IMG/VR virus record: IMGVR_UViG_3300020469_003050
Coordinates: 124,001-188,000 of that record
Strand: one strand, 5' to 3'
Length of the DNA: 64,000 nt
Part shown: positions 1,213-63,317 of the stretch, piece by piece
Position numbering within the stretch: position 1 is the stretch's first letter
Layout of the letters: every line of letters begins with the position of its first letter
The notes under the pieces: generated by a model
What the model was told of the DNA's origin: nothing
Databases searched by the model: none
What the model saw: only the letters and a program-made list of their open reading frames with translations
Translations under genes and position numbers: made by a program

Positions 1213-1220
1213 TATTTATG
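1213..1220 (-). promoter_or_regulatory. T4-like late promoter (CATAAATA)
   Basis: Reverse complement of tatttatg, about 40 nt upstream of the 1172 start. Confidence 0.45.
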
Positions 1221-1241
1221 TTCGTAGTTAAAGGGGAAAAC

Positions 1242-1272
1242 TTGACAACTATAAAAAAGGTGTTATTATAAT
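1242..1272 (+). promoter_or_regulatory. sigma70-type promoter
   Basis: TTGACA(1242-47)-N16-TATTAT with TGn extension; an overlapping TATAAT lies at 1267-72. Confidence 0.55.
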
Positions 1273-1275
1273 ATT

Positions 1276-2103
1276 ATGATGAATTCAGCAGAGGTATATG
1301 ATATGGAACATGTAGGTGGTAAACACACTCACTTTGAAAGAAACGTACTTTATCACCACAAGTATAATTTCCAAATAGATAATTCAGGTGTTGACTATAA
1401 AGATATTTTAGAACGTGAAGAAATTGGTTTCTCACGTGAGCAAGTTGTAGCGGCGGCTATTGTTGCCGATAGTTTCAATGAAGGTACATATGTAAAAGCA
1501 CAAGGTGGTGTTTTTGATTTTGCTGATACAAAACAAGGTAGTCGATATCTTCAAATGAAAATTCCGAATAAAGATATTCTTGTAGGTATTCTACATTTAT
1601 ATCCACATCTAATCGAAGATAAGCACATTGAAAGTGCAAAAGAAATTATTAAAGAACTTGAAATGGACTTCATGTTTAAAATCATGTCAGAAAAAATGAC
1701 AGAATTTGAAAGTGGCATTGCAAGTATACTGGCGTCTACAGATAAACTAGCCAAGCAATTTTGGGGTGTAGCCGCATATCTACCGACTTATGCAGTTAAG
1801 AAAGTATGGGAACGGGAAGTTACTGACCGTAGTGAAAACTCAGTACACATAACATCAACACGCAACGATGGTAAAGTGTTCATGGACATTACAGTATTGA
1901 AATCAAGTGCGAGTCAAACATATCCTGGTTTCAACGTATCTGCTATTTCTAGTGACGGCAATCGTGTAAGTTTCTTTAGTACTAAAAGTGGTTGGGAAGT
2001 AGATAAAGAATTTACGATTACTGCTAAAGTAAAAGGTCATGGTAATGTTTGGAATCAAGAACACATAGCAGAGACAAGGTTGAATTACGTAAAGGCTTTA
2101 TGA
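1276..2103 (+). CDS. hypothetical phage protein, possible C-terminal OB-fold
   Basis: 275 aa ORF behind a promoter. The C-terminus is beta-rich (...TITAKVKGH...ETRLNYVK). The fold guess is weak. Confidence 0.6.
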   Translation: MMNSAEVYDMEHVGGKHTHFERNVLYHHKYNFQIDNSGVDYKDILEREEIGFSREQVVAAAIVADSFNEGTYVKAQGGVFDFADTKQGSRYLQMKIPNKDILVGILHLYPHLIEDKHIESAKEIIKELEMDFMFKIMSEKMTEFESGIASILASTDKLAKQFWGVAAYLPTYAVKKVWEREVTDRSENSVHITSTRNDGKVFMDITVLKSSASQTYPGFNVSAISSDGNRVSFFSTKSGWEVDKEFTITAKVKGHGNVWNQEHIAETRLNYVKAL

Positions 2104-2195
2104 TTCCATTACTACTTACTCTTTGTTACTTAGGAGCAATATACGGTTTCGTATGTTTACTATTGTTACTTTGGAACAACGAAAACGTTAAATGA
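2100..2195 (+). CDS. 31 aa hydrophobic micro-protein
   Basis: MIPLLLTLCYLGAIYGFVCLLLLLWNNENVK; ATGA overlaps with both neighbouring genes. Confidence 0.5.
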   Translation: MIPLLLTLCYLGAIYGFVCLLLLLWNNENVK

Positions 2196-2317
2196 GAATA
2201 ATCTGTTATAAGTCACCAACTGATTACGTCACACACGATTTTCCAAAAGAAGAACTCAATGAAATATTAGACATATGTAAAGAACTTGATATCAAGTGGT
2301 ATGTCCTAGTATATTAA
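2192..2317 (+). CDS. 41 aa hypothetical protein
   Basis: MRIICYKSPTDYVTHDFPKEELNEILDICKELDIKWYVLVY; ATGA-coupled to the upstream micro-ORF. Confidence 0.5.
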   Translation: MRIICYKSPTDYVTHDFPKEELNEILDICKELDIKWYVLVY

Positions 2318-2339
2318 TAACGAAAGAATAAATACGACT

Positions 2340-2723
2340 ATGAACAAGTTACTAGTACACAAGCACCTGTTAATTCGTGCCGAGGTTAATGAGCCTCTAC
2401 AAAACAAAAACAAAGCAATTAAGTATTTGCGAAAGATGATTAAAGCCATTGGTATGAAACCAATGTATGGACCTACTGCATCTTATTGTAAGATGGAAGG
2501 CAATAGAGGTCTAACTGCTTTTGCAATTATAGAAACATCACATATTGCTATGCACATATGGGACGAAGTAAGTCCTGCACTATGTCAGTTAGATGTATAC
2601 ACTTGTTCAGAAATGGATCCTAATCAGGTTCTACCTTTCTTAGAAGTTATGGAACCTGCTAAAGTAGAATATAAATTCCTAGACAGAGAAAGTAAGTTTG
2701 AAGAAATATACTCAAGTAAATAA
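2340..2723 (+). CDS. speD: S-adenosylmethionine decarboxylase homolog (pyruvoyl-dependent, SpeD/SpeH class)
   Basis: GLTAFAIIETSHIAMHIWDE with self-cleavage SH site, QLDVYTC, and typical 127 aa size. Confidence 0.85.
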   Translation: MNKLLVHKHLLIRAEVNEPLQNKNKAIKYLRKMIKAIGMKPMYGPTASYCKMEGNRGLTAFAIIETSHIAMHIWDEVSPALCQLDVYTCSEMDPNQVLPFLEVMEPAKVEYKFLDRESKFEEIYSSK

Positions 2724-2769
2724 TTCAAACGTATACAGATTACTAAATCCCCAAAAGATAAGTATTAAT

Positions 2770-3551: not shown

Positions 3552-3587
3552 AAAAACTTGACAATATAACGATTCGTGTTATATTAT
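3552..3587 (+). promoter_or_regulatory. early promoter, CGAWTCG class
   Basis: AAAAACTTGACA-atataa-CGATTCG-tgt-TATATT, nearly identical to 43634-43669. Confidence 0.75.
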
Positions 3588-42553: not shown

Positions 42554-42910
42554 TTATTCTCTCTTTAAATCTATCGTAAGTGTGATAGGCTCTTTTTCAG
42601 GTAAAACCGCTACACTGATAGAGGCTGTGACTGTATGTTCACCTTCAGTTAAGTTGATGTTCTCTAAATTCACTCTAGGCTCATCACTGATGATGTTTGT
42701 TAAATCTTCTTCAATAAGTATTCTTGTGTTAGGAGTCAATGGTTCGAATATCATATCATGTATGATAGACCCATAAGTAGGCATCATCACTCTTTCACCT
42801 TTACGGGTCATGATATGATTCATTAAATCTTCGACAACTAACTCTTTTCCAGTTAGTGTGTGATTGATTGCCTGTTTATTTTTAGTACTAAAACCTATAA
42901 ATCTTGCCAT
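42554..42910 (-). CDS. gp25: baseplate wedge subunit, gp25-like
   Basis: DLMNHIMTRKGERVMMPTYGS...FEP...EPRV. Confidence 0.9.
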   Translation of the reverse strand: MARFIGFSTKNKQAINHTLTGKELVVEDLMNHIMTRKGERVMMPTYGSIIHDMIFEPLTPNTRILIEEDLTNIISDEPRVNLENINLTEGEHTVTASISVAVLPEKEPITLTIDLKRE

Positions 42911-42936: not shown

Positions 42937-42944
42937 TATTTATC
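42937..42944 (-). promoter_or_regulatory. late promoter GATAAATA
   Basis: Upstream of the gp25-gp6 operon. Confidence 0.7.
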
Positions 42945-42970
42945 ATTGTATAAACTTCGAACTTTTAGTA

Positions 42971-42999
42971 TTGACTTTTTATTTCATTTACTATATAAT
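42971..42999 (+). promoter_or_regulatory. sigma70 promoter of clpP
   Basis: TTGACT-N17-TATAAT. Confidence 0.75.
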
Positions 43000-43038: not shown

Positions 43039-43635
43039 ATGCCTAATTTAGTACCAATGGTCGTAGACCAAACTGCAAATGGAGAACGTAGCTTTGATAT
43101 ATTCTCTCGTTTGCTTAAAGAAAGAGTTATATTCTTAACAGGTGAAGTAAATGACTATCAGTCAGACTTAATCTGTGCCCAATTTCTATTCTTAGAAGCA
43201 GAAAATCCAACAAAAGATATACATTTTTATATCAATTCACCAGGTGGGGCTGTCACAGCCGGCATGGCGATATATGATACAATGCAATTTATCAAACCAG
43301 ATGTTTCAACAATGGTTTTAGGTCAGGCATGTTCTATGGGTTCTCTCTTAGCAAATGCTGGAGCTCCAGGTAAAAGATTTATGCTACCTCATGCAAGACA
43401 TATGATACATCAACCAAGTGGTGGCGCAGGCGGTCAAGCAACTGATATGGAAATCCAAGTAAAAGAAATTCTAAAAGTTAAAGAAAGTCTGACTAATATC
43501 TATGTAAAACACAATTCAAAAGGTAAGACTTTTGATGAATTACATGCTGATATGGAGAGAGATAAATTCATGGGTCCAGAAGAGTCACTAGAATATGGCT
43601 TAATTGACGAAATTCTTAACGAAAGACCGGCGTAA
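43039..43635 (+). CDS. clpP: ATP-dependent Clp protease proteolytic subunit
   Basis: [28 protein letters not shown] (Ser), MIHQPSGG (His), ERDKFM (Asp). Confidence 0.97.
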
Positions 43636-43667
43636 AAACTTGACAAAATAGCGATTCGTGTTATATT
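43634..43667 (+). promoter_or_regulatory. early promoter, CGAWTCG class
   Basis: TTGACA(43640)-aaatag-CGATTCG-tgt-TATATT. Confidence 0.75.
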
Positions 43668-43691
43668 ATTATCTTAACTGAGAGATAATAA

Positions 43692-44663
43692 ATGATAAAA
43701 AAATTAGTAATTGCTAGTCTATTTCTGTCTTCATCTGCATTCGCAGATAGCTATGGATATAGCTACAAAAATCTTACACATATAATGGATAGTAAAACTG
43801 CAAACATGATGCAGTTTTCAGATAACTCTAAACACATGCCACGTGAACGATTACAGTTTGGTAACTTTCACGGTCGTGATGCATTAGAAATTACATTAAA
43901 ACAATCTGATATAGGTAGCATCGGTGATGCTGGTCGTGATATGGGTTGGGGTAATGCTCAACGTATTCAAATACGTGAAAAAGAATATAAACGTGAAATG
44001 TGGGACGGAAAAGAATACTGGTATAAGTTATCAATGTTCATGCCTAAGAATTTAGGAAGTAATAATCATACAGTTAGTTTGTTTGATTTGAAATTAAGAA
44101 AAAATAAACAAGAAGGTACACAAGTATTTTCATGGAATATCACTAATGGTGAATTAGGTTTTCAACTTGAAACTGGTGACTGGTTATGTTGGACACGTAA
44201 AATAGACGGTGGGGCAAATCGTAAACAATGCTCTTTTAAAGATAATTTTATTTCAATACCAAAAGACAACTATCGAAACAAATGGGTCGATGTTGTTATG
44301 CAAATCAATATGATTAAAGGAAAAGAAATATTTCGTGTGTGGGCAAACGATGAACTAATATTATCATTTGCAGGCGATATCAATCCTTTTGGTCGTGAAT
44401 TGGGATTTAAGTTTGGATTATATAGACATCATATGACTACTAAATTAGAAGATGATGTTGCATATTATTCTGATATCAAACGAGGCAAATCTTGTTCTGA
44501 TTTGAATGTAAATTGTGATAAGTTTATGAATGATTTTTCTGGTCTAGGTGCATTTAATATGCAGAAAGTATTACATGTAGAGAAATATGTAGAAAAAAAT
44601 GGACCTAAACTAAGATTTAATGATATTTGTTATAAAAAAGAGTGCGAAAACTTGACAGAATAG
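43692..44663 (+). CDS. secreted polysaccharide lyase-like (beta-jelly-roll) protein
   Basis: Signal peptide; ALEITL...QRIQI...KEYWYKLSMFMP...NKWVDVVMQI...VWAND...FKFGLYR. Confidence 0.7.
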   Translation: MIKKLVIASLFLSSSAFADSYGYSYKNLTHIMDSKTANMMQFSDNSKHMPRERLQFGNFHGRDALEITLKQSDIGSIGDAGRDMGWGNAQRIQIREKEYKREMWDGKEYWYKLSMFMPKNLGSNNHTVSLFDLKLRKNKQEGTQVFSWNITNGELGFQLETGDWLCWTRKIDGGANRKQCSFKDNFISIPKDNYRNKWVDVVMQINMIKGKEIFRVWANDELILSFAGDINPFGRELGFKFGLYRHHMTTKLEDDVAYYSDIKRGKSCSDLNVNCDKFMNDFSGLGAFNMQKVLHVEKYVEKNGPKLRFNDICYKKECENLTE

Positions 44664-44679
44664 CGAATCGTAGTATAAT
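44648..44679 (+). promoter_or_regulatory. early promoter, CGAWTCG class
   Basis: TTGACA(44652)-gaatag-CGAATCG-tag-TATAAT. Confidence 0.75.
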
Positions 44680-44709
44680 ATACTTATATTGAATGAAAGA
44701 GAGGACTAA

Positions 44710-45057
44710 ATGACTACATATCAAGAAGTTGCAAACGAGGCAAAAACACAGGCTGTACAAGCAGTTGATACATTTTTCAATGATGTTTTAAAAGGCGAAG
44801 ACCAATATGCATGTGGTTTTGCATGGGTTACTGTTTATCCTGAAAACAAAGGTAACACTAAACTTGGTAAAGCAGAACGTAGGGGTTTAGAATCTATTGG
44901 ATTTAGTAAAGACTGGACAGGCAAGGCTTGGCAGTTGTGGAATCCAGGTGAGTATCGAGGTCAAAACATTGACGCCAAAGAAAAAGGTGCAGAAGTTTAT
45001 GCTCAAGTAATGAAATCATATGGTTTCAAAGCATATGCTGGTTCAAGGTTAGACTAA
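44710..45057 (+). CDS. hypothetical phage protein
   Basis: Own promoter and RBS GAGAGG; ACGFAWV...QNIDAKEKGA...YAGSRLD. Confidence 0.75.
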   Translation: MTTYQEVANEAKTQAVQAVDTFFNDVLKGEDQYACGFAWVTVYPENKGNTKLGKAERRGLESIGFSKDWTGKAWQLWNPGEYRGQNIDAKEKGAEVYAQVMKSYGFKAYAGSRLD

Positions 45058-45093
45058 AAAACTTGACAGATTCGAGAATCGTGTTATTATAAT
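45058..45093 (+). promoter_or_regulatory. early promoter, CGAWTCG class
   Basis: TTGACA(45063)-gattcg-AGAATCG-tgt-TATTAT. Confidence 0.75.
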
Positions 45094-52200: not shown

Positions 52201-54082
52201 TTTCATTTCTCCAATCACCAACAGTTTCTAAAAAACTATTTGCCATATAAGCATCACTAGGAAGCACATATGCTTTTTGTAATTGATTTGATAGACTAAT
52301 AGTTAAATCTAAAATATGTTCGTTTCTGCCTGTATATTGATAATAATATCTTTTATTACAATGACCTTCTAAAAATACTGAACTTAATATCTTTGCCGTT
52401 TGTTCTGTTAGTTTTGCACTGTGTAATTGATTTTGAACAATTAATGCTTTTTGTACAGTAAGAAAATATGTAACTTCATATGTTTGTTTGCTAGTTAAAA
52501 CATTATAACCGCCTAACTTAGGTCTTGCGTGTGGTAAAATTCTAAACAAGTTACTCAACTTTGGTTTTTCGTCTGTCAATGCTTCTCTTATTTCTTTAGA
52601 GTTTAAACATATGCTTTCTATTGCATTATATATAGATGAGCCGGGTGTTATGACACCTGTTTGTTGTCCTATTTTTACTGAATTCTTTTTTGATGTTTCA
52701 TTATTGCCTGAGGCTTTATTAGCCTCATCTGGTGAAGTCATTTGTCCTTGTGCAAACATTTGTTTGAAGTTATCATCCATTTCAAACTTATAATCGTTTA
52801 TAAATTCTGAGTCTCCAACTATTGACCTTTCGACTACTTTTTCATTTAATTTTTTGAAAAAGTTTTCTAATGTTTCTTGTAATGTATCAGCAACATCAAA
52901 CTCAAAGTTGTATTCCATTTGTGATAAATCTGAATCTGCAATAACTTTATCATTTACTATTGTTCCATCGATAACAAGATTTGTTCCTTTTGATTCTGTG
53001 ACAGATTGTAATTCATTATATTTTGTAATTACGAATGGGAATATTTTTGTTGCTGGTAAATTCTTTACTACGTTTCCATCATTATCATATCCTTTAAAAC
53101 GCACCTTCATAAAGAATGTTGCATTTTGTAAATCAGGATATCCACAAATTAAAATACTATTGTTTAGCATATCAGGAAGTGATGTTCCGCCAACTTGTGA
53201 AATTGTAAATTGTAGATTAGTGGCAGTGCCTGCCATCTTTGATGCAGTAGATGTGCCTTGTCCGACACTGGTTACTGTTAAGTCTGTAATGTTTAATTCT
53301 GTTGTTATTCCTGTTCTTGCAATCGTAACCACGTTCATATCATTTGTAGGCCAAGCATCATTTACAATGTCGTCCATCATTTGTGGTGTTTGCTCGTATG
53401 CAAGAAATTTATTTGCTTCTTGTTGATTAACAATAAACAAATCTAAATTATAAGTATAATGTTCAAATGCATCTAATTCGTTTTCCCAAAACAAATTTTG
53501 TGCTTCCATGTTTTGAATTAGTTCAGCTAGACTGGCAGATGATTTAATTGCATTTCGTTTTTTATCTTCAATATCTGATATGCCTTCTACTTCTGGTTCT
53601 TGTATTACTTCTCCATTAGATATTAGTTCTCGTTGGTCATCATCGTCAATAACAGGAACGCCGTCTGGTTGAGTACCGTACGCCATACCTAATCCGCCTT
53701 CAATACTGTCTCCGAAATAATCTAATGCTTCTTGTCCGCCTTCTTTTTGGATCATAGCCGAAACCATTTTTTCTGCTAGTTCTGGATTAGCAGATAAATC
53801 AATGGAAGCATCTTTATCTATTCCCATTTTTGATGCAACGAAGTCTACATAACCAGTAGTATCATTTTCGTTAGGTGGAGCCCAACGTTGAATTATTCCT
53901 TCAACTGTGTTTAGTCCGTGTTTGTCTTGATAAGTTTCTAGTGTTCTACCTAATGCTCTAACACCATGTTCTGGTGTGGCAAAAGAAACAAATGCGCCAT
54001 CGTCACCTGTCTTACCTTTCCAAGCAGTAGAGTTTGTTCTAATATTGCCTGGGTTATTATTTCTTACACTTCTAACTGCCAT
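49205..54082 (-). CDS. baseplate hub-like protein with an N-terminal lysozyme-like (NNPGNI) domain
   Basis: VRNNNPGNIR...FATPEHGVRAL...RWAPPNEN; hub-type YTYNL, YYYQYTG, MTIKGDPYW. Confidence 0.65.
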   Translation of the reverse strand: MAVRSVRNNNPGNIRTNSTAWKGKTGDDGAFVSFATPEHGVRALGRTLETYQDKHGLNTVEGIIQRWAPPNENDTTGYVDFVASKMGIDKDASIDLSANPELAEKMVSAMIQKEGGQEALDYFGDSIEGGLGMAYGTQPDGVPVIDDDDQRELISNGEVIQEPEVEGISDIEDKKRNAIKSSASLAELIQNMEAQNLFWENELDAFEHYTYNLDLFIVNQQEANKFLAYEQTPQMMDDIVNDAWPTNDMNVVTIARTGITTELNITDLTVTSVGQGTSTASKMAGTATNLQFTISQVGGTSLPDMLNNSILICGYPDLQNATFFMKVRFKGYDNDGNVVKNLPATKIFPFVITKYNELQSVTESKGTNLVIDGTIVNDKVIADSDLSQMEYNFEFDVADTLQETLENFFKKLNEKVVERSIVGDSEFINDYKFEMDDNFKQMFAQGQMTSPDEANKASGNNETSKKNSVKIGQQTGVITPGSSIYNAIESICLNSKEIREALTDEKPKLSNLFRILPHARPKLGGYNVLTSKQTYEVTYFLTVQKALIVQNQLHSAKLTEQTAKILSSVFLEGHCNKRYYYQYTGRNEHILDLTISLSNQLQKAYVLPSDAYMANSFLETVGDWRNEIDSRAEQKLTELEGQATGLKDGIKMLKTASNQYQKRFDDLNNEIKNEFKERVKRRITGPDNAVDSNVADILNAIENADANQMLEMFDEDSEEYEIINEIFKGEVRENYNKLHNQIQETRTDLNQTLVDQKENEVTQNEVMREALGHLYSTKIIESTNMIGDNWNELGLFPGSEGQELILSEDLDKEMINKLSKDQFSSLLKALVENPINFSRITKSMLSQPTNLNVIKSPDQENIEVAMEKYYEGRNNNLSMLNVNMTIKGDPYWVDSILSPSMEKAKFGNKNSLEDYKMHLSKINGCNYLMLVSDKAEDVFLNDPNRVGQDSENYDGIKKTRLITSVYSVQSVISSFSGGLFTQTLGLVKLPAAEEFVKIDATLDAPEPELVNLDVAQMEIQPLLGVNDPGNGLENPNEKADIEAKEFADDIVAPAGAGTGVTPEGDRYIVDVSATGPHAVMALQNATTNFLEPSNQNDYAVPNESVAKQLALARQQAEGLCALGHQQSCVAVQQSANDIAKRLADDYQTGNNSVAESTRNAYNESIDNGYIVSAQTMAEIDHALEASGNATIGTNVTGVDQNELDAINDANRIESERYVKGNDDIKKEPLSIMDNLEVVDADGTATNTEKANSVDGPNAILDGDVELNNLGFSSSHDAYASGRMPRSYNVNVEGGTLTANEADKVSALNQEAQDIIDGRGLHDLTDQEYAEVKTIEKSIDTITENATSGIRGDAIQGVKDQKKLEVLTSKESELDELNDDIDNGFYFTGNYGRNKDRAKAEVLQAEVNQLRSDLDTSEGVTTGVIAVEDASGDVTYEKVTKPIKAPNKNAPIPVVETLGDSGGTAINNVEGAVANGQISQTQVNQYNSATSVYNELIEKAEAAPRATITETVGGVTMTEEVLDFSAIGPITYTNSSGQEVTVTDPATHFGLVDGTAAPNSFDYYKPGLNSKNIKQTISNEYPDVAISPNRGVGDVNDISNDEEGGPLKMTVKYNEGDFVVVNPPTP

Positions 54083-54088
54083 TATATA

Positions 54089-54382
54089 CTACTTCATGTT
54101 ATCTAACTGGTTCTTGCTAGGTATTTTTATTTTTGTTCCTGCCGTAAAATCATTTATTGGGTCCTGTATAATATCAGGATTTCTTTTAGCAAAAATCCAC
54201 CAGTATTTTGAAGTACCATATAATTCGTAACTGCATAAGTCAGGTCTGAGATTATAAGTTTGTGGTATTGTGTAAGTTTCGTCTAATGCACTTCTTTGTA
54301 AAAATACGGGATTTTGTATATCCAATACTTTATTTTTTAGAACAGTAGTCTTCTTCCACGGAGAAGTTGGATCATAAGCCAT
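54089..54382 (-). CDS. gp53: gp53-like LysM-fold baseplate protein
   Basis: YNLRPDLCSYELYGTSKYWWIFA...GTKIKIP. Confidence 0.8.
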   Translation of the reverse strand: MAYDPTSPWKKTTVLKNKVLDIQNPVFLQRSALDETYTIPQTYNLRPDLCSYELYGTSKYWWIFAKRNPDIIQDPINDFTAGTKIKIPSKNQLDNMK

Positions 54383-54948
54383 TATACATACCCCTTATTA
54401 GCTAAATTTCCACTTAAATAATCTTGCATATTAAAGTTTTTTCTAACATTCTTTGGAGAATATGTAGTTGTTAATGACATAACAAACATATTCTGTACTG
54501 GAACTCTTGCACCATTTGTTTCAACATAGTCGATATCTGAGTCTAAGTTCCATGTAAAATCTCTTATTAAAACAGGAACATTTTTATAGATGCCATGTGC
54601 ATCTAATCTCAATATTGGTGGGGGAAGACCAGCATTATCTGATTGCATTCCAAAGTCCATTTTCAATGCGCCTCTTAAGAAGTTAGCCATTTGCAATACA
54701 GTTTGTGCCTCACTTGTACTACGAACAATAACTGGAGCAGTCATGTTAAATTCAGTATTTGAAGACATATCGAATGCTCTTTGTTGAAAATTAGTGTGAG
54801 ATAAGTCATAGGAACTGTATCCAGTACTCGTTAATACTGTGATTGTTGGTGTATATGGGAACTGAATAGTGTTCAATCCAGATGCACTTAATCGTCCACT
54901 AGGGTCTCTTAGTGATACTGGTTGTTGTGTTGCATACATATTGTCCAT
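54382..54948 (-). CDS. tail tube initiator/baseplate protein (gp48/gp54-like)
   Basis: IQFPYTPTI, PPPILRLDAHG...KNVPVLIRDF. Confidence 0.65.
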   Translation of the reverse strand: MDNMYATQQPVSLRDPSGRLSASGLNTIQFPYTPTITVLTSTGYSSYDLSHTNFQQRAFDMSSNTEFNMTAPVIVRSTSEAQTVLQMANFLRGALKMDFGMQSDNAGLPPPILRLDAHGIYKNVPVLIRDFTWNLDSDIDYVETNGARVPVQNMFVMSLTTTYSPKNVRKNFNMQDYLSGNLANKGYV

Positions 54949-54968
54949 GTTTAACTCCTTCTTTGTTG

Positions 54969-54976
54969 TATTTATC
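54969..54976 (-). promoter_or_regulatory. late promoter GATAAATA
   Basis: Upstream of the hub/spike operon. Confidence 0.7.
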
Positions 54977-55017
54977 GTTACTTAAACTACGAAGTTTAAA
55001 AATAAGTATTTTAGCAC

Positions 55018-55046
55018 TTGACATTGGGTTTCAGATGTATTATAAT
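55018..55046 (+). promoter_or_regulatory. sigma70 promoter
   Basis: TTGACA-N17-TATAAT (exact consensus). Confidence 0.85.
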
Positions 55047-55071
55047 TAATAATATTAATAGGAGCAAAACC

Positions 55072-55944
55072 ATGGCACGTAGAGGTCAAAATTATTTAAA
55101 CAATAAAGATATGCTTAAAGAAATTCATATCTCTAAATCAAACTTTTGTTGGTTTGAAGACAGAGAAACACATCATCAATATGATGTTATCTTAGACGAT
55201 GTAAGTGAAATTCATAAAGCAGAAGAACAAGCAAGAACCAATCGAGCAAATAGATTACAAAAAGCCGCTTGGGACTTAAATGAAGATAAAAAGAAAAGAC
55301 AAGTAGACTTTGCAGTAGATCCAGCATCTTTCGATAAAGAATTGTTGGTTTTCAGAGTTATGACTTTCGACCATATTCCAGATGAACCTGGTCGTAAAGC
55401 AAACCCAAAGTCTGTCGCAGACCACAAAGTAAAGCTACATTTCCCACCATATAAACATTATGTTATTGATGGCAAAAAGACAAGAGAAGTAGCATGGTCA
55501 CATTACAACAAAGACAAAGAATTTGATTTACGAGGCGGTAAGATTACGGCAACGTTAGCCAATATGTACATCAAATTAGTTGAGCGTTATTCTCAAAGAA
55601 GTAACTGGAGAGGCTATACGTATATCGATGAAATGCGTGGACAAGCACTTTTACAACTTGCACAAATTGGATTACAATTCAATGAAGCAAAAAGTGATAA
55701 CCCATTTGCATATTATACGGCGGCTGTAAACAATTCATTTACACGTGTTCTAAACACTGAAAAGAAAAATCAAGGTATTCGTGATGACCTATTAGAGAAA
55801 TCAGGTCAGATGCCAAGTTGGACTAGACAATTAGAACATGAAATGAAATCTCAGGAAAGATGGCAAAAAGTAATTAAAACAAGAATTACTGATGAACAAA
55901 TTCCAACAGAAACTATCAAAGAGATTTACGCCGACAATGACTAA
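55072..55944 (+). CDS. gp55: late transcription sigma factor, T4 gp55-like
   Basis: NYLNNKDML...NWRGYTYIDEM...FNEAKSDNPFAYYT; true start ATG 55072 with RBS GGAG. Confidence 0.85.
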   Translation: MARRGQNYLNNKDMLKEIHISKSNFCWFEDRETHHQYDVILDDVSEIHKAEEQARTNRANRLQKAAWDLNEDKKKRQVDFAVDPASFDKELLVFRVMTFDHIPDEPGRKANPKSVADHKVKLHFPPYKHYVIDGKKTREVAWSHYNKDKEFDLRGGKITATLANMYIKLVERYSQRSNWRGYTYIDEMRGQALLQLAQIGLQFNEAKSDNPFAYYTAAVNNSFTRVLNTEKKNQGIRDDLLEKSGQMPSWTRQLEHEMKSQERWQKVIKTRITDEQIPTETIKEIYADND

Positions 55945-56953
55945 TCTATTTAAAAAAGCCGCTTGGTTCACTGATATACATTATGGTATGCGTAACAACG
56001 CACGCCAACATAATATCGATTGTGATGAATTCATAGACTGGTTTATTCAAGAAGCTAAAGCTAAAGGTTGCGAGACTTGTATCTTTGGTGGTGACTGGCA
56101 TCATAATCGTGCTAGTTTGAATATCTCAACTATGAAGTATAGCCTTGCAGGTTTACGAAAACTTAATAATTCGTTTGAAAAAGTTTACTTTATTTTAGGT
56201 AATCATGATTTGTTTTATCGTGAAACACGTGATGTAAACTCAGTAGAGTTTGCAAAAGAATTACCTAATATAGTTCTAATCGATGATAAACTAGTTGAAG
56301 GCGATGTAGCATTGACTAGTTGGTTAGTTGGGGATGAATGGAAAAAGATACCAAAGATAAAAACAAAATATATGTTCGGACACTTTGAACTTCCAACGTT
56401 CAAATTAAATGCGATGGTAGAAATGCCAGACCATGGTGGACTAAAAAGTGAAATGTTTGAACATCAAGATTTTGTTTTCTCAGGACACTTTCATCATCGT
56501 CAAGTAAAAGGCAACGTGATATATACAGGTAATGCATTTCCACACAACTTCTCAGATGCAGGAGATGATGAACGTGGTTGGATGTTCTTAGAATGGGACA
56601 AAGAACCGGAATTCTTTGCATGGCCTGATGCTCCTAAATATAAAAATATCACGTTGTCTACACTACTTGAAAATCCATCGAAGTACTTGTTACCTAAAAC
56701 AAGTGCAAGAATAACACTTGATATAGACATTACATATGAAGAAGCTACGTTCATTAAAGATACGTTTGTTGAAGCATATGACTTACGAGACATTGCATTA
56801 CAGCCAATGAAGAACAGTGAGCATGAAAGCGACACTGGTGCTGAAATTCATTTTGAAACAATCGATGAAATTGTAATTTCACAATTAAACTCTATTGATG
56901 ATAATGGTAGCTTTAATAAAAAAGTTCTTGTTGAACTATATCAGAATTTATAA
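55937..56953 (+). CDS. gp47: Mre11/SbcD-like recombination nuclease (gp47)
   Basis: FTDIHYG, GGDWHH, LGNHD, FGHFE, FSGHFH. Confidence 0.93.
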   Translation: MTNLFKKAAWFTDIHYGMRNNARQHNIDCDEFIDWFIQEAKAKGCETCIFGGDWHHNRASLNISTMKYSLAGLRKLNNSFEKVYFILGNHDLFYRETRDVNSVEFAKELPNIVLIDDKLVEGDVALTSWLVGDEWKKIPKIKTKYMFGHFELPTFKLNAMVEMPDHGGLKSEMFEHQDFVFSGHFHHRQVKGNVIYTGNAFPHNFSDAGDDERGWMFLEWDKEPEFFAWPDAPKYKNITLSTLLENPSKYLLPKTSARITLDIDITYEEATFIKDTFVEAYDLRDIALQPMKNSEHESDTGAEIHFETIDEIVISQLNSIDDNGSFNKKVLVELYQNL

Positions 56954-56954
56954 T

Positions 56955-57560
56955 ATGAAAAAAGATTTATATGTATTAATCACAGGGAACAAGTACTATG
57001 GGCTTTGCAAAGCGATATGCAATCTTTTTGATAGTGTGGATAATATTAGTTATCGCACTGCTAGTCGTACAAATGATTGGTCGTTAGATAAGAATTCTGA
57101 ACAAGAAAGATTGGCTGAGTATTTTGTCAATGAAGGGTTTGATATCTTCATTAACAATTCAGCATTATGGAAATTTCACCAGATAATGATTGCAGAACAT
57201 GTTTATAATAAATGTGTAGAAAAAGAAAGGTCTGCACATATTATTAATATAGGTTCTACTGCCGATACAGGTGTAAAAGGTAGAACATGGAGATATCCAA
57301 CAGAAAAGAAAGCACTAAAAGATTATAATCGTGATTTAACATACATGACAATGGGAGGTTCTAATATCAAATCAACACTGATATCACCGGGTAGTTTAAC
57401 AACACCAAGTGTAATGAAGAAACATCCTGATAGAAAGTTCTTAGATACAGAGTATGTAGCTGAGTTGATTTTATGGTTGATTAATCAACCAGATTATGTT
57501 AATATTAATGAAATTTCTGTAGATCCAATACAGACAGGAATATACGCAAGAGAGAGGTAG
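56955..57560 (+). CDS. short-chain dehydrogenase/reductase
   Basis: LITGNKYYGL, DIFINNSA, IINIGST, YPTEK (YxxxK), ISPG. Confidence 0.85.
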   Translation: MKKDLYVLITGNKYYGLCKAICNLFDSVDNISYRTASRTNDWSLDKNSEQERLAEYFVNEGFDIFINNSALWKFHQIMIAEHVYNKCVEKERSAHIINIGSTADTGVKGRTWRYPTEKKALKDYNRDLTYMTMGGSNIKSTLISPGSLTTPSVMKKHPDRKFLDTEYVAELILWLINQPDYVNINEISVDPIQTGIYARER

Positions 57561-59382: not shown

Positions 59383-59632
59383 TTTTAAAATGGTTCATAA
59401 GCCACATAAAATGTTAGAATGGCTTGAAGGTGAATGCACTGAATGGGCTCATGGCATAATCAAAGAACATTTTCAAGTAGAAGATACTGATACATTATCT
59501 AAGGAACAAATCGAAGAAGTTATTGCTGAATGGGAATTACTAGCCGATAGTCCAAGTTATGATTTCTTGTCAATGGGTTTCAGAAACATAATTAGTTCGT
59601 GGGAAAATGAACACGATGATTATTTAATTTAA
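59375..59632 (+). CDS. hypothetical protein
   Basis: RBS AAGGAG; overlaps the gp46 stop. Confidence 0.65.
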   Translation: MSDFKMVHKPHKMLEWLEGECTEWAHGIIKEHFQVEDTDTLSKEQIEEVIAEWELLADSPSYDFLSMGFRNIISSWENEHDDYLI

Positions 59633-59644
59633 AAGGAGTATAAC

Positions 59645-59821
59645 ATGAGTATACATGAACAAATCGTACAACAATACGAAAACTATTTAAGTGAACATGC
59701 CGCATGGGAAGACAAGGGCGTTAAAGCCGCGGCCGCTAGAGCAAGAAAGGCTTTAGGTGAAATTGGAAAACTTACAAAAGAAAGACGTAAAGAAATCCAA
59801 GAAAAGAAAAATAATATGTAA
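59645..59821 (+). CDS. histone H1-like Hc1-family small protein (58 aa)
   Basis: MSIHEQIVQQYENYLSEHAAWEDKGVKAAAARARKALGEIGKLTKERRKEIQEKKNNM; RBS AAGGAG; missed by the ORF track. Confidence 0.7.
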   Translation: MSIHEQIVQQYENYLSEHAAWEDKGVKAAAARARKALGEIGKLTKERRKEIQEKKNNM

Positions 59822-59828
59822 AAAGGTG

Positions 59829-59857
59829 TTGACAAGGCTTTCTGATAATGTTATTAT
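59829..59857 (+). promoter_or_regulatory. sigma70 promoter
   Basis: TTGACA-N17-TATTAT with TGn. Confidence 0.75.
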
Positions 59858-59863
59858 AGAGTC

Positions 59864-59927
59864 ATAATAAAAGATGCAAAGTGTCTCCTCTCAACCTCTC
59901 TCATCTAACTGAGCATCTTTTTTTATT
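59864..59927 (+). ncRNA. candidate small RNA with a C/U-rich anti-Shine-Dalgarno loop
   Basis: Directly after a promoter; 9 bp stem AAAAGATGC/GCATCTTTT encloses CTCCTCTCAACCTCTCTC; ends in a T-tract; no ORF. Confidence 0.5.
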
Positions 59928-59995: not shown

Positions 59996-60187
59996 ATGCA
60001 TAAGCCCGTTGATAAAAATAAAATTAAAGAAGAAGAAAAAGAAAAACTAAATAAACAAGTACAAGAATTTTTAAACAAAGGTGGAAAGATTTCCATCATG
60101 CCTGAAGGCGCAATCACAGAAGAAGGCCAACTGAATTATAAATTCAGACGTGGAAAGAAAAAGAACACAACTAATGAAAAAACGTAA
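59996..60187 (+). CDS. SutA-like RNA-polymerase-binding small protein
   Basis: KLNKQVQEFLNKGGKISIMPEG resembles the SutA EEFLxxGGKV motif. Confidence 0.55.
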   Translation: MHKPVDKNKIKEEEKEKLNKQVQEFLNKGGKISIMPEGAITEEGQLNYKFRRGKKKNTTNEKT

Positions 60188-60868: not shown

Positions 60869-60869
60869 A

Positions 60870-60998: not shown

Positions 60999-61521
60999 TA
61001 CCTTCAATGCAGTGACGTTCAAATACGTCTGAATTGTACTTCCAAAATTCTTCTGCACTTGTTAGTATCCAACAACCATTCTTCTCAGACTTGTAAGTTA
61101 CACTAATCGGTGAACGCCATCCGAGTCCATTCATACGGTCTTGAAACGCAACATAAGTTCCTATACGATTAAATTTCATAAAGATAATGTTAACATCACT
61201 ATCTTCTGCAATCTCCATAGTTTGTACAATCCAGTCCTCCAAAAGAGGAATTTTTTTATCATACAATAAATGGTGCCAAGGGAATTCTTTATAAAACTTA
61301 CACTCACAGTTAAAGTACTTCCAGTTATCAGGAGGTATAATATCTCCTTTAAAACCTCGTACTTGTCCTTCGCTTAAGTTAGTTGCTCTATGGAAATTAC
61401 TTCCACCTATAAATGCTCCAGAATTAGGGACACGTACAAAACTACCATTATATTTTTCACTTAGAAATTTTGCTTGTTCTCTTTCATATCCAGAACCCTT
61501 AGATTTGCTTTTACTTGGCAT
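60991..61521 (-). CDS. PD-(D/E)xK nuclease, Holliday junction resolvase-like
   Basis: SKGSGYEREQA...RVPNSGA...KGDI...ECKFYK. Confidence 0.8.
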   Translation of the reverse strand: MPSKSKSKGSGYEREQAKFLSEKYNGSFVRVPNSGAFIGGSNFHRATNLSEGQVRGFKGDIIPPDNWKYFNCECKFYKEFPWHHLLYDKKIPLLEDWIVQTMEIAEDSDVNIIFMKFNRIGTYVAFQDRMNGLGWRSPISVTYKSEKNGCWILTSAEEFWKYNSDVFERHCIEGIK

Positions 61522-61621
61522 ATGTTTAATCTCTTTTCATTATAAAAGGTCTAAAGACCTAATCCCAATTAATATTCATTCGTTAGCACTCATTCATATT
61601 AATCGGTATTTCTATTTCTTT

Positions 61622-61650
61622 ATTATATAACATTAATTGGTATAAGTCAA
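61622..61650 (-). promoter_or_regulatory. sigma70 promoter
   Basis: Minus strand TTGACT-N17-TATAAT. Confidence 0.7.
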
Positions 61651-61659
61651 ATGATATTA

Positions 61660-62135
61660 TATTATGAGTCTCTGTCCCGTGAAGAAGCCATAATTGCCCT
61701 GTTGCCAGGACAATTAAAAAATGGCTGTACAGAAAATCTTGTCTTATCTGTCCCTTGCTCATCGCCTCTATGTCTAAGTTAGTCGCTAGTTACGACGGAG
61801 TCGGTTGACGATCCCTCCTTAACTTAGTATTGCATCTTTCGATTCAACGGCACCCTTTATAATCCACATAGATAGAAACTATAAAAAGCAGATAGTGTTA
61901 TAAAAACCTATCATCGGTAATATTATACTAGTCAACCATGTTCTTTAGGAACCATGGCTGTTTTATGATTATGAATACTCTTTGTGGTTTACGAGAAGAA
62001 TGTCAGAATTCATCCTGACTAGTCCGACGGCAAACACTACGTTTGCAGTCTCAATCCCGTGTCGGCAACCCGACAAACGATTCCACTATGTATGCTGAGA
62101 TATTAGTCATTCCCTTTTCCTATTCGCCGAGATAT
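61660..62135 (-). ncRNA. candidate large structured non-coding RNA (~480 nt)
   Basis: GC-elevated, no credible ORF, at least eight stems, GCAA and GAAA tetraloops and G-U pairs that work on the minus strand. Confidence 0.6.
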
Positions 62136-62161
62136 ATATTAGATTGTATTAGTTTTATTAG

Positions 62162-62401
62162 TTATAGTATTGGCATTCCTGCCTTTTTACTCATTTCAAA
62201 ATTCTGGTCAATAATCTCATTCAGATGTTTGATATGATTCACTGGCATTTCATGAAGTTCTGAGATAGAAACCCCACCCCTCATGTACCAAGATAATTGT
62301 AACAGATTCTTATGTACCTTGTCAAGTTCTTTTTCAAACTTTTTTTGTTTTTCTGCAATTTCTTCACCGCTGGCGGTTGCTAGCCAGCCTAGGAAAAATT
62401 T
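62162..62401 (-). CDS. -1 frame extension of the gp26-like gene (gp51-like module), no own upstream start codon
   Basis: FLGWLATASGEEIAEKQKKFEKELDKVHKNLLQLSWYMRGGVSISELHEMPVNHIKHLNEIIDQNFEMSKKAGMPIL*; entered via the A_AAT_TTT heptamer. Confidence 0.6.
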   Translation of the reverse strand, partial: KFFLGWLATASGEEIAEKQKKFEKELDKVHKNLLQLSWYMRGGVSISELHEMPVNHIKHLNEIIDQNFEMSKKAGMPIL

Positions 62402-63222
62402 GCAGGATTAATCTCTATATTAACTTTTTGTACATGGTCGCATTCTGGACATTTAAATTCAAAATTGTTTAACGCTTCTGGCTTTTTAGCTATGTCTTTA
62501 ACTCTTTTATCCATATTTGTAACTACTGATGTAGGAACATTAGCAAGAAATTCAATAATTTGTTTCTTGTCAGTGACCTCACCTTCTGGTGTTTCTATCT
62601 TATCGATAGTCTCTGAAATCAAATCAACATTGTATTCAGCTACACGTTTGAAACTTTTGTAAAACTTTTTCGCAAGTTCCAACTCATCCTTATCATTAGT
62701 AATATCATTTTTGACATTATTAACGATTCGCTGTTCTTCAAGCTGGATAAGAGCAACCCGTGTAACACTTTCTAGTGTTGGTGGTCTCATATGGATTGTT
62801 AAATTTTCATATACTACAGGCTCAACCTTATTAATTTCAGGGAACTTGTTTAGTACAAAATCGATATCAATATTGAAATCATTCTTATTCTCACACTCTT
62901 TACATGTATGAGTATATGTGAGATTACTACCGTTTGTTGCGTATTGAATAGCCATATAAAGTGCTTCTGCATCAATGTTGCATAATTTTCTTGCATCTTT
63001 GATACTAGGAACACAACTTTCTATTAAAGAAATCATTGCCTCACCATTAAGAAGTGCATCTGGATTACGCATTGTAATCTCATCGATAGCAGTCATAGGC
63101 ATAACGCCCACTTCTTCAATAATAGTTTGGTCTATTTCTGGGTTAAATTTACCTTTAGTTGGTAAACTAACATATATAGCTGGCTTTCTAAAGTACTTAG
63201 TTAGCGGGTTATCGGTCATCAT
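62389..63222 (-). CDS. gp26: baseplate hub/tail assembly chaperone, T4 gp26-like
   Basis: NPLTKYFRKP...LPTKG...MTAIDEI...PDALLNG...CKEC...CPEC. Confidence 0.75.
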   Translation of the reverse strand: MMTDNPLTKYFRKPAIYVSLPTKGKFNPEIDQTIIEEVGVMPMTAIDEITMRNPDALLNGEAMISLIESCVPSIKDARKLCNIDAEALYMAIQYATNGSNLTYTHTCKECENKNDFNIDIDFVLNKFPEINKVEPVVYENLTIHMRPPTLESVTRVALIQLEEQRIVNNVKNDITNDKDELELAKKFYKSFKRVAEYNVDLISETIDKIETPEGEVTDKKQIIEFLANVPTSVVTNMDKRVKDIAKKPEALNNFEFKCPECDHVQKVNIEINPANFS

Positions 63223-63236
63223 TAATTCCTTGGATT

Positions 63237-63244
63237 GATAAATA
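63237..63244 (+). promoter_or_regulatory. late promoter GATAAATA
   Basis: Upstream of the tape-measure-like gene. Confidence 0.6.
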
Positions 63245-63288
63245 CACTTATAATAAACTTTAAGTGGTTATATACGTATATTTAGATG

Positions 63289-63317
63289 TATTATAAACTA
63301 CGAAGTTTAACTTGTCA
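63289..63317 (-). promoter_or_regulatory. sigma70 promoter for the gp26-like gene
   Basis: Minus strand TTGACA-agttaaacttcgtagtt-TATAAT (N17). Confidence 0.8.

What the first reader, a model, noticed from the sequence alone, without database searches (positions are those of the whole stretch)
1218..63310. Operator-like motif AAACTTCGTAGTTT at all four divergent gene junctions, between late and sigma70 promoters
Seen: TAAACTACGAAGTTTAA is identical at 54983-54999 and 63294-63310, a variant AAACTTCGAACTTT is at 42952-42965, and the core TTCGTAGTT is at 1221-1229. These are the only four divergent junctions in the window, and each pairs a late [GC]ATAAATA promoter with an opposed sigma70 promoter. 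At 42.9 kb and 55.0 kb the motif ends exactly 7 nt before GATAAATA; at 63.3 kb it occupies the sigma70 spacer. It has dyad character (AAACT-N4-AGTTT). Inference: a binding site for a phage regulator that coordinates the early-to-late switch or insulates back-to-back promoters. Canonical T4 late promoters need no such upstream element.
Basis: partly seen in the sequence, partly recalled or inferred. Interest (0 to 1): 0.72.

Follow-up and report, generated by a model that had tools for sequence, protein, structure and literature searches.

The report
Conserved dyad upstream of two late promoters
In an uncultured 343-kb marine T4-related jumbo phage, a short CG-centred palindrome-like DNA element sits at a fixed distance upstream of the two late promoters that head the big tail/baseplate operons, is kept there in dozens of relatives, and is most likely a regulator binding site, which simple T4-type late promoters are not known to need.

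Summary
Three of the four sites (42.9, 55.0 and 63.3 kb) are one real, conserved element. The fourth (1.2 kb) is probably chance.

The element has the consensus TAT(A/T)A(A/T)nT(W)CG(W)AnTTT, with a symmetric core AWNTWCGWANWT. Its CG lies exactly 13 nt from the leftward late promoter GATAAATA in 64 of 66 distinct relatives' sites. Its distance to the rightward sigma70 promoter ranges from 6 to 60 nt. It is therefore tied to the late promoter, not to the sigma70 promoter and not to divergent junctions as such.

Only 2 of about 50 late promoters per genome carry it in that register. This holds both in this phage and in a 342-kb relative. A third copy at 63.3 kb fills the spacer of a perfect leftward TTGACA-17-TATAAT promoter.

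My best reading is an operator-type site for a dimeric DNA-binding protein that tunes the late promoters of the tail/baseplate operons. No regulator was identified. A DsbA/GapR-like gene is only a lead.

"All four junctions" and "early-to-late switch/insulator" are not shown. I rate it a new variant of a known kind, of moderate interest.

The parts
54981..54998 (.). Motif copy J3 (CTTAAACTACGAAGTTTA; 17-mer 54983-54999). Its CG at 54990-54991 lies 13 nt from the late box.
   Evidence: It is conserved in 41 of 54 distinct orthologous junction sequences at the same 13-nt distance.
54969..54976 (-). Late promoter GATAAATA (TATTTATC on the plus strand). It heads the leftward virion/baseplate-hub operon that starts at 54948.
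   Evidence: GATAAATA occurs 44 times in intergenic DNA against 15 in coding DNA, a 36-fold enrichment.
55018..55046 (+). Sigma70-type promoter TTGACA(55018-55023)-17-TATAAT(55041-55046) of the late sigma gene.
   Evidence: Its distance from the motif varies from 6 to 60 nt in relatives.
55072..55944 (+). Late sigma factor gene, a gp55 homologue of 290 aa with an extra N-terminal domain of about 150 aa.
   Evidence: phrog_12791 E 3e-80. The C-terminal half of the AF2 model matches T4 gp55 chain 7d7c_F, probability 1.0.
42949..42966 (.). Motif copy J2 (TATAAACTTCGAACTTTT). Its CG at 42958-42959 lies 13 nt from the late box.
   Evidence: It has the top matrix score in the genome (24.2). It is conserved in 23 of 24 distinct orthologous junction sequences.
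42937..42944 (-). Late promoter GATAAATA heading the 35-kb leftward baseplate/tail operon (first gene 42554-42910, baseplate wedge).
42971..42999 (+). Sigma70-type promoter TTGACT-17-TATAAT of the prohead protease gene (43039-43635).
63292..63309 (.). Motif copy J4 (TATAAACTACGAAGTTTA; 17-mer 63294-63310).
   Evidence: It ranks first of 685,180 genome positions under a matrix built only from J3 orthologues of relatives. It is kept in relatives down to 58% hub-protein identity.
63290..63318 (-). Perfect sigma70-type promoter TTGACA(63318-63313)-17-TATAAT(63295-63290) for the baseplate-hub gene (62389-63222). The motif is its spacer.
   Evidence: The -35 box is kept in the close relatives L283-L285.
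63279..63286 (-). Degenerate late-like box TCTAAATA, 14 nt from the motif CG, one more than at J2 and J3.
   Evidence: This reading is an inference from alignment with J2 and J3.
63237..63244 (+). Plus-strand late promoter GATAAATA pointing at gene 63332.
63270..63281 (.). Second perfect palindrome, ATATACGTATAT, that fits the 12-bp dyad core. Its centre is 26 bp from the centre of the J4 motif.
   Evidence: It was not tested further.
1221..1229 (.). Core-only match TTCGTAGTT abutting the late box TATTTATG (1213-1220). It is probably not a member of the motif family.
   Evidence: score 14.7. The junction is absent in the three diverged relatives L303-L305 and kept only in the 100%-identical contig L302.

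Best explanation
The motif is a conserved cis-regulatory element. Its consensus is TAT(A/T)A(A/T)nT(W)CG(W)AnTTT, with a dyad-symmetric core A-W-N-T-W-C-G-W-A-N-W-T. It forms one composite unit with a gp55-type late promoter. Its centre lies 14.5 bp upstream of GATAAATA, roughly -27 from the late start. This is the place where a class-II activator or a promoter-occluding repressor would sit.

Only the two late promoters that head the large leftward tail/baseplate operons (J2 at 42.9 kb, J3 at 55.0 kb) have it in that register. A third copy (J4 at 63.3 kb) lies in the spacer of a leftward sigma70 promoter for a baseplate-hub gene.

The most likely mechanism is that a dimeric sequence-specific DNA-binding protein, phage or host, binds the dyad and sets the strength or timing of these leftward promoters separately from the other ~45 plain late promoters.

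Shown: the sequence, the conservation, the fixed phasing to the late box, the restriction to 2-3 sites per genome, and the symmetric conservation pattern. Inferred: protein binding, the identity of the protein, and the direction of the effect.
For: Conservation at orthologous junctions:
- The block is conserved at the orthologous sigma-gene junction in 52 distinct IMG/VR sequences whose sigma protein is 53-94% identical. The adjacent 4-nt spacer and the downstream DNA vary freely.
- The same holds at the protease junction, 23 of 24 distinct sequences.

Phasing:
- The distance from the late box to the CG is 13 nt in 64 of 66 sites and 14 nt in the other 2.
- The distance from the CG to TTGAC is 6-60 nt at J3.

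Restriction to a few sites:
- The composite pattern occurs exactly twice in each large relative record and never in the reversed-pattern control.
- Among all ATAAATA sites, only two per genome have a block at the 4-nt spacer. In this phage they score 24.2 and 20.1, with the next at 4.2. In the 342-kb relative G001 they score 24.4 and 19.8.

Same motif at independent junctions:
- A matrix built only from J3 orthologues of relatives at 85% identity or less ranks J4 first and J2 third of 685,180 positions in this genome.

Symmetry:
- The conserved columns are mirror pairs: A29/T40, T32/A37 and C34/G35. The central W positions occur in all four combinations.
- The 12-bp dyad is 6.5-fold enriched in intergenic DNA in this phage and 9.4-fold in G001.

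Other:
- In G001 the J2 dyad is flanked by late boxes on both sides, 13 and 15 nt away, in divergent orientation.
- Metatranscriptome contigs cover both flanking genes but not 54945-55068. This fits an untranscribed promoter-region element, but it is weak evidence.
Against: - No binding protein was found. There are no HTH_3, sigma70 r2/r4, MotA or AsiA hits in the genome.
- The only lead is a DsbA/GapR-family gene (phrog_639 E 2.4e-7; Pfam PF11126 below its cut-off). That family is described as a nucleoid-type binder of AT-rich DNA (PMC7824862).
- The promoter-proximal TAT triplet is conserved on one side only, so the site is not purely symmetric.
- At J4 the geometry to the late-like box differs by 1 nt and the setting is a sigma70 spacer. 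In the 58% relative the setting differs again.
- About 45 late promoters work without the element, so it is not needed for late transcription as such.
- No transcript start-site data exist for this phage.
Confidence: 0.5

Rival explanations
1. Bipartite late promoter. The block is an upstream promoter element read directly by RNA polymerase carrying the enlarged gp55-like sigma, through its extra N-terminal ~150-aa domain or a co-factor. It would act like a -35 or extended element that strengthens two key late promoters, with no separate regulator.
For: - The block keeps a fixed 13-nt register to the late box at two independent junctions.
- The one-sided conservation of TAT next to the late box fits a directional promoter element.
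- The late sigma is about 105 aa longer than T4 gp55. Its N-terminal alpha/beta domain has no known fold match.
- No separate DNA-binding regulator was detected.
Against: - Only 2 of about 50 late promoters have the block.
- The mirror-symmetric conservation and the free flipping of the central W-CG-W suit a dimer, not a polar sigma-DNA contact.
- J4 carries the same block inside a sigma70 promoter spacer.
- The N-terminal domain shows no HTH-like fold.
Confidence: 0.15
2. Extra rightward promoter. The TATAAA/TATAAT part of the block is a -10 box and CG(W)A the start region of a plus-strand promoter, sigma70 alone or activator-dependent 'middle' type. It would lie back to back with the late promoter and give the protease, sigma and 63332 genes a second promoter.
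For: - The proximal hexamer reads TATAAA, TATAAT or TATTAT in most relatives, with A at the -11 equivalent in 46 of 52.
- At J4 it lies 35 nt before the ATG of gene 63332 with a Shine-Dalgarno sequence in between. It shares the 13-mer AGATGTATTATAA with the true -10 region of the J3 sigma70 promoter.
- CBB/GAP32-type phages have a non-canonical promoter class in front of their gp55-like gene (PMC5259590).
Against: - The position equivalent to the near-invariant -7 T is A in half of the sites.
- There is no -35 or TGn element.
- Conservation extends 10 nt past the putative start, in mirror symmetry.
- Independent back-to-back promoters would not keep a 4-nt spacer unchanged while every other distance drifts.
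- Metatranscriptome contigs of the sigma gene begin at 55069-55087, not near 54992. This is weak evidence.
Confidence: 0.15
3. A phage regulator's operator is present at every divergent junction, sits between a late and a sigma70 promoter, and coordinates the early-to-late switch or insulates the two promoters.
For: - All three good copies are at divergent junctions that hold both promoter types.
- At J4 the motif fills a sigma70 spacer, a classic repressor position.
- At J2 it ends 3-5 nt before the -35 box in all relatives.
Against: - The 1.2-kb site is not a member.
- About 20 other divergent junctions lack the motif, including ones with overlapping sigma70 and late promoters at genome 45.0, 204.7 and 309.7 kb.
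- The distance to the sigma70 promoter at J3 is unconstrained and not helically phased: 6, 10, 15, 19, 24-27, 36, 45-47 and 60 nt.
Confidence: 0.1
4. No function. The similarity reflects shared ancestry or recombination between junctions, or chance in AT-rich DNA.
For: - J3 and J4 also share a second exact 13-mer, which suggests sequence exchange between the two junctions.
- The loose dyad pattern is at chance frequency.
Against: - The block is kept while neighbouring positions and spacings diverge, across sigma identities of 53-94%, at two non-homologous junctions.
- The reversed-pattern control gives 0 hits against 2 per genome.
- Cross-junction matrix ranks are 1 and 3 of 685,180.
Confidence: 0.05

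Closest known systems
T4-type late promoter (TATAAATA; gp55 sigma, gp33 co-activator, gp45 sliding clamp)
   Same: - The 8-bp box [G/C/T]ATAAATA is strongly enriched upstream of genes.
- A gp55 homologue is confirmed by profile and by fold.
- Most late promoters here have no conserved upstream sequence.
   Different: - Two late promoters per genome carry a conserved dyad in fixed register about 14 bp upstream. The T4 late promoter is described as recognised only at its 8-bp downstream site (PMC2988020).
- The sigma is about 105 aa longer than T4 gp55.
- No gp33 or gp45 (DNA_PPF) match was found with the tools used.
T4 DsbA (dsDNA-binding protein; reported sites overlapping two late promoters)
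   Same: - T4 DsbA was reported to bind specific A/T-rich sites that overlap two late promoters (PMC2988020, citing Gansz 1991).
- This phage encodes an 86-aa member of the same PHROG (genome 59622-59882).
- The heptamer TCGTAGT lies in the spacer of that gene's own promoter, both in this phage and in relative G001.
   Different: - Homology is weak (Pfam E 9e-4, below the cut-off).
- The gene abuts the DNA polymerase gene, not a gene 33.
- DsbA is considered GapR-like and low-affinity (PMC7824862, PMC2988020).
- No binding to this dyad has been tested.
T4 middle promoters (MotA box at -30 plus sigma70 -10, with AsiA)
   Same: A protein-recognition box centred near -30 replaces a -35 element upstream of a -10-type box.
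   Different: - The box here is dyad-symmetric and CG-centred, unlike the asymmetric MotA box.
- The downstream element is a late (gp55) box, not a sigma70 -10.
- No MotA or AsiA match was found (the controls were uninformative).
Lambdoid/434-type operators in divergent promoter regions
   Same: A 14-bp 5-4-5 dyad lies between divergent promoters. At J4 it sits between the -35 and -10 boxes, like a repressor operator.
   Different: - There is a single site per junction rather than an array of three operators.
- No Cro/cI-type HTH gene was detected.
- The site is phased to a late promoter that has no -35 box.
Non-canonical promoter before the gp55-like gene of Rak2-like phages CBB/GAP32 (-35 TGAAACG)
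   Same: The junction has the same gene order: virion protein on the minus strand, late sigma on the plus strand. A late box lies back to back with an unusual CG-containing element (GAP32: TATTTATT-ATA-TGGAACG; PMC5259590).
   Different: In GAP32 the element is a -35 box 17 nt from a TATAAT on the sigma side. Here the element keeps no fixed distance to the sigma-side promoter.

Membership tests
T4-type late promoter | An 8-bp TATAAATA-like box enriched just upstream of genes | tested here: met
   GATAAATA occurs 44 times in intergenic DNA against 15 in coding DNA (36-fold). 58 ATAAATA boxes lie within 200 nt upstream of co-oriented genes.
T4-type late promoter | A gp55-family sigma factor encoded by the phage | tested here: met
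   phrog_12791 E 3e-80. Foldseek matches T4 gp55 chain 7d7c_F with probability 1.0 and rmsd 1.9 over 87 columns.
T4-type late promoter | No sequence requirement upstream of the 8-bp box | tested here: not met
   For J2 and J3 only. A conserved block lies at a fixed 13-nt distance in 64 of 66 distinct sites. The other ~45 late promoters meet this feature.
T4-type late promoter | gp33 co-activator and gp45 clamp homologues | tested here: inconclusive
   No DNA_PPF hit. T4 gp33 by phmmer gave a best E of 0.17. These proteins diverge fast, so absence is not shown.
Dimeric-repressor/activator operator | Dyad symmetry of the conserved positions | tested here: met
   The mirror pairs A29/T40, T32/A37 and C34/G35 are each conserved in 42-49 of 52 sequences. 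The extra TAT on one side is not symmetric.
Dimeric-repressor/activator operator | Conservation at orthologous positions in relatives | tested here: met
Dimeric-repressor/activator operator | A cognate DNA-binding protein that binds the site | not testable with these tools
   No HTH_3 or sigma r4 hits. The complex prediction with DNA was not folded. EMSA or pull-down is needed.
T4 MotA-dependent middle promoter | MotA box consensus at -30 with a sigma70 -10 box, plus MotA and AsiA genes | tested here: not met
   The box sequence is different and symmetric, and the downstream element is a late box. No MotA_activ or AsiA match was found, but the control genomes had none either.
UP element of sigma70 promoters | An A/T-rich element at a fixed position, -40 to -60, from the sigma70 start | tested here: not met
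   The distance to the -35 box is 6-60 nt at J3, and the core is an invariant CG. By contrast, the gp32-promoter look-alike (genome 226254) behaves as an UP-like A/T element without a conserved CG.
Intrinsic terminator / structured RNA hairpin | A stable stem-loop kept by compensatory changes | tested here: not met
   Minimum free energy is -0.3 to -4.3 kcal/mol with z-scores of +0.9 to -1.5. The stem pairs are not kept in relatives; AAACTTCGAACTTT, for example, breaks the C/G pair.
T4 DsbA-bound late promoter sites | A DsbA-family protein encoded by the phage | tested here: inconclusive
   phrog_639 E 2.4e-7, but the best PHROG is phrog_12534 (function unknown). Pfam Phage_DsbA scores 19.9 bits against a cut-off of 25.

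The most novel reading that the evidence does not exclude
This clade of marine T4-related jumbo phages has two classes of late promoter. One is the plain gp55 box. The other is a dyad-bearing class used only for the leftward tail/baseplate operons. A dedicated dimeric factor, possibly the DsbA/GapR-like protein whose role has stayed unknown since its discovery in T4, would add a separate control layer (sub-timing or dosage of tail against head genes) on top of T4-type late transcription.
Probability: 0.3. Interest if true: 0.65.

Novelty: new variant of a known kind. Interest (0 to 1): 0.5.

Why it matters
T4-type late promoters are the textbook case of a minimal promoter: one 8-bp box, activated through the sliding clamp and not through upstream DNA. 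A positionally fixed, dyad-symmetric upstream element kept across a broad, abundant and uncultured marine jumbo-phage clade, but only at the promoters of the tail/baseplate operons, would mean that late transcription is subdivided by a sequence-specific factor.

It also offers a concrete, testable target site for the long-unexplained DsbA-type proteins of T4-like phages.

In practice, the composite TATTTATC-N4-TATAAAnTWCGWA is a compact marker of two conserved module boundaries in these genomes.

Tried and rejected
- **Exact 14-mer scan of IMG/VR.** It returned only scattered, unrelated hits and was not informative.
- **The 1.2-kb site.** Rejected as a member because of its low score, different geometry and non-conserved junction.
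- **A fourth candidate dyad, AAATACGTATTT, before the gp32 promoter (genome 226254).** Rejected. In relatives the CG is not kept, and the region behaves as an A/T-rich UP-like element.
- **Half-site TCGTAGT as an independent signal.** It is 4.2-fold enriched in intergenic DNA in this phage but not in relative G001 (0.8-fold).
- **Hairpin or terminator reading.** Rejected.
- **Replication-origin idea.** GC skew simply follows gene orientation.
- **Searches for a regulator.** HTH_3, Sigma70_r2/r4, MotA, AsiA and GcrA gave no hits.
- **Fold of the late sigma's N-terminal domain.** No informative PDB match.
- **Complex prediction of the DsbA-like protein with the J3 DNA.** The job was not folded and gives no verdict. 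It is no evidence either way.
- **First structure job.** It was re-sent without them.
- **PA5oct.** Its sigma junction keeps the late box and an AT-rich TTATAT block but not the CG dyad.
- **Metatranscriptome contigs.** They are too sparse to map transcript starts.

Full report
**What the window is.** The window is bases 124,001-188,000 of a complete 342,607-bp phage genome with direct terminal repeats and 34.8% G+C. It encodes a gp55-type late sigma factor (window 55072-55944; my query started 9 nt upstream in frame). The match to phrog_12791 has E 3e-80. The C-terminal half of an AlphaFold model superposes on T4 gp55 in the late open complex, 7d7c_F, with probability 1.0. The nearest named phages are Pseudomonas PA5oct (51% aa) and the Rak2-like group (about 41%). 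Near-identical and related contigs are common in marine viromes and metagenomes. Nothing in GenBank phages matches at the DNA level.

**Check of the observation.**
- The 17-mer TAAACTACGAAGTTTAA occurs only at 54983 and 63294 in the whole genome.
- The four sites are the only minus-to-plus junctions in the window.
- At 42.9 and 55.0 kb the 14-mer core ends 7 nt from TATTTATC.
- At 63.3 kb the motif is the exact 17-nt spacer of a minus-strand TTGACA-17-TATAAT promoter.
- The loose pattern AAACT-N4-AGTTT is not above chance: 8 matches against 7.8 expected. The case therefore rests on the longer matches and on conservation.

**Promoter background.** GATAAATA is 36-fold enriched in intergenic DNA (44 against 15). 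About 50 copies sit shortly upstream of co-oriented genes. Sixty-one TTGAC(A/T/C)-16..18-TAnnnT promoters lie in intergenic DNA. This agrees with the early, middle and late promoter classes described for the related CBB/GAP32 phages (PMC5259590) and with the T4 late promoter (PMC2988020).

**Conservation in relatives.** I fetched the orthologous junctions from IMG/VR.
- At the sigma junction (J3), 52 distinct sequences, with sigma 53-94% identical, keep GTATTTATC-g-N3-TAT(A/T)A(W)nTnCG(W)AnTTT. The 4-nt spacer, the distal flank and the distance to the sigma70 -35 box all vary.
- At the protease junction (J2), 23 of 24 distinct sequences keep the same block.
- The late box lies 13 nt from the CG in 64 of 66 sites and 14 nt in the other 2.
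- The CG lies 6-60 nt from TTGAC at J3, with no helical phasing, and 10-11 nt at J2.
- The composite pattern occurs exactly twice in each of four large relative records, including a 342-kb, 92%-complete genome. The reversed-pattern control never matches.
- Scoring the position upstream of every ATAAATA in this phage and in the relative G001 gives two outliers per genome: 24.2 and 20.1 against a next-best 4.2, and 24.4 and 19.8.
- A matrix built only from J3 orthologues of relatives at 85% identity or less ranks J4 first and J2 third among all 685,180 positions of this genome. The three junctions therefore carry the same motif by a test that is not circular.
- J4's block is also kept in the few relatives found for the hub gene, down to 58% identity, although its surroundings change.
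- The 1.2-kb site fails. It scores 14.7, its CG lies 2 nt from the late box, and the junction does not exist in the three diverged relatives that hold the locus; only a 100%-identical contig keeps it.

**Anatomy.** The strongly conserved columns form mirror pairs around the CG: A29/T40, T32/A37 and C34/G35. The two W positions next to the CG occur as TACGAA, TTCGTA, TTCGAA and TACGTA. The consensus core is thus the palindrome AWNTWCGWANWT, with three further conserved bases (TAT) on the late-promoter side only. This 12-mer is 6.5-fold enriched in intergenic DNA in this phage and 9.4-fold in G001. As RNA or single-stranded DNA it folds weakly (-0.3 to -4.3 kcal/mol, not different from shuffles), and the stem is not maintained in relatives. 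In G001 the J2 dyad is flanked by late boxes on both sides in divergent orientation, 13 and 15 nt away. At J4 a second perfect palindrome of the same core type, ATATACGTATAT, lies 26 bp away. J3 and J4 also share the unique 13-mer AGATGTATTATAA.

**Interpretation.** The fixed register to the late box, together with the free distance to the sigma70 promoter, ties the element to the leftward late promoters. It is not tied to the rightward promoters or to divergent junctions in general. About 20 other junctions lack it, including ones where sigma70 and late promoters overlap. The other ~45 late promoters lack it too, so it is not part of the basic late promoter. It marks out the promoters of the 35-kb baseplate/tail operon (first gene a baseplate wedge subunit), the 9-kb virion/hub-lysozyme operon, and, at J4, the baseplate-hub gene.

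The centre lies near -27 of the late start. This figure is inferred from the T4 position of the box, from established knowledge. That position, the mirror-symmetric conservation and the operator-like placement in the J4 sigma70 spacer together fit best with a dimeric DNA-binding protein acting on these promoters. The direction of the effect is not known. Sparse metatranscriptome contigs cover both genes at J3 and leave 54945-55068 uncovered. This fits an untranscribed control region, but it proves little.

**Rivals.**
- A directly read upstream promoter element (a bipartite late promoter using the extra N-terminal domain of the sigma) would explain the fixed register and the one-sided TAT. It fits poorly with the symmetry, with the 2-in-50 distribution and with J4.
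- A rightward -10-like promoter (TATAAA/TATAAT plus a CGWA start) is suggested by the hexamer and by J4's layout. Against it, the -7 position is A in half of the sites, there is no -35 or TGn element, and conservation continues symmetrically beyond the putative start.
- Pure chance or common descent is excluded by the conservation pattern and the controls.

**Search for the factor.** No HTH_3, sigma70 region 2/4, MotA, AsiA, GcrA or gp45-type hits were found. The review of T4 late transcription notes that T4 DsbA had specific A/T-rich sites overlapping two late promoters and that its role remains undiscovered (PMC2988020). Using the T4 gene to obtain the family accessions, I found an 86-aa member of phrog_639 at genome 59622-59882. 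It lies directly before the DNA polymerase gene and is conserved in relatives. Its promoter spacer contains TCGTAGT both in this phage and in G001, at shifted positions. DsbA is regarded as GapR-like, a nucleoid-type binder (PMC7824862), and the Pfam score here is below the cut-off. It is a lead only. The complex prediction with DNA was not run by the tool.

**Novelty.** I found no description of an upstream dyad at T4-type late promoters in the papers searched. The element is best called a new variant of a known kind: a late promoter with an operator-like upstream site. Interest is moderate.

Noticed in passing
genome-wide; in the window e.g. 1183-1211, 3558-3586, 43640-43668, 44652-44680 and 45063-45090: About 22 sigma70-type promoters form a tight class: AAAAC-TTGACA-N4-6-(C/A)GA(A/T)TC(G/A)TGT-TATTAT-ATATACATAATCA. 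Its conserved spacer motif contains GANTC. CGATTCG resembles the CcrM/GcrA-type methylated promoter motif (recalled from memory). The phage has no GcrA hit and only a weak N6_N4 methyltransferase hit.
   Followed up: partly
window 59645-59821 (+) and 59996-60187 (+): A 58-aa histone-H1-like Hc1 protein (Pfam PF07432, E 1.6e-11). Next to it is a 63-aa ORF with a sub-threshold match to the SutA RNA-polymerase-binding domain (E 3e-6).
   Followed up: no
G000 59540-59882 (outside the window; locus L391 1398-1740): A DsbA/GapR-family 86-aa gene abuts the DNA polymerase B gene (TAA then ATG). It is preceded by a TTGACT-17-TATTAT promoter and then a terminator-like hairpin. The hairpin stem is kept in relative G001 by a quite different sequence, which suggests an attenuator-like leader.
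   Followed up: partly
G000 226290-226383 (locus L307 1290-1383): The gp32 (ssDNA-binding protein) leader carries repeated GGCTAATA / CTAATACAGGCTAATATAGGAG units. They are conserved across relatives at 72-100% identity. This is reminiscent of the T4 gene 32 translational operator.
   Followed up: no
G000 45036-45090, 204735-204763 and 309687-309724; window 63279-63318: Sigma70 and late promoters overlap or stand in tandem at several junctions. Examples are TTGACT-17-TATAAT-7-TATAAATA on one strand, and a late box inside a sigma70 spacer. RB49 and cyanophages, which lack MotA/AsiA, are proposed to achieve 'middle' expression this way (PMC2984593).
   Followed up: no
window 55033-55045 and 63284-63296: The 13-mer AGATGTATTATAA occurs only twice in the genome. 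At J3 it is the -10 region of the sigma promoter. At J4 it directly abuts the motif. This hints that J4 was assembled from J3-like pieces.
   Followed up: partly
window 55072-55521 (sigma residues 1-150): The late sigma has a well-predicted N-terminal alpha/beta domain (pLDDT 85-94) with invariant residues across the clade. It has no Pfam match and no PDB fold match.
   Followed up: partly
L300 1361-1480 (PA5oct) and L301 1341-1475 (GAP32): The gene order at the junction, virion protein on the minus strand and late sigma on the plus strand, is kept as far out as PA5oct and GAP32, with a late box next to the sigma promoter. GAP32 has TATTTATT-ATA-TGGAACG-17-TATAAT there, the 'TGAAACG' promoter class of CBB/GAP32 (PMC5259590).
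   Followed up: partly
window 52500-57500: Marine metatranscriptome runs X15-X18 hold contigs 99-100% identical to both the virion-protein genes and the sigma/SbcD genes. The phage, or a near-identical one, is therefore transcriptionally active in sampled seawater, unless DNA carry-over explains the contigs.
   Followed up: no
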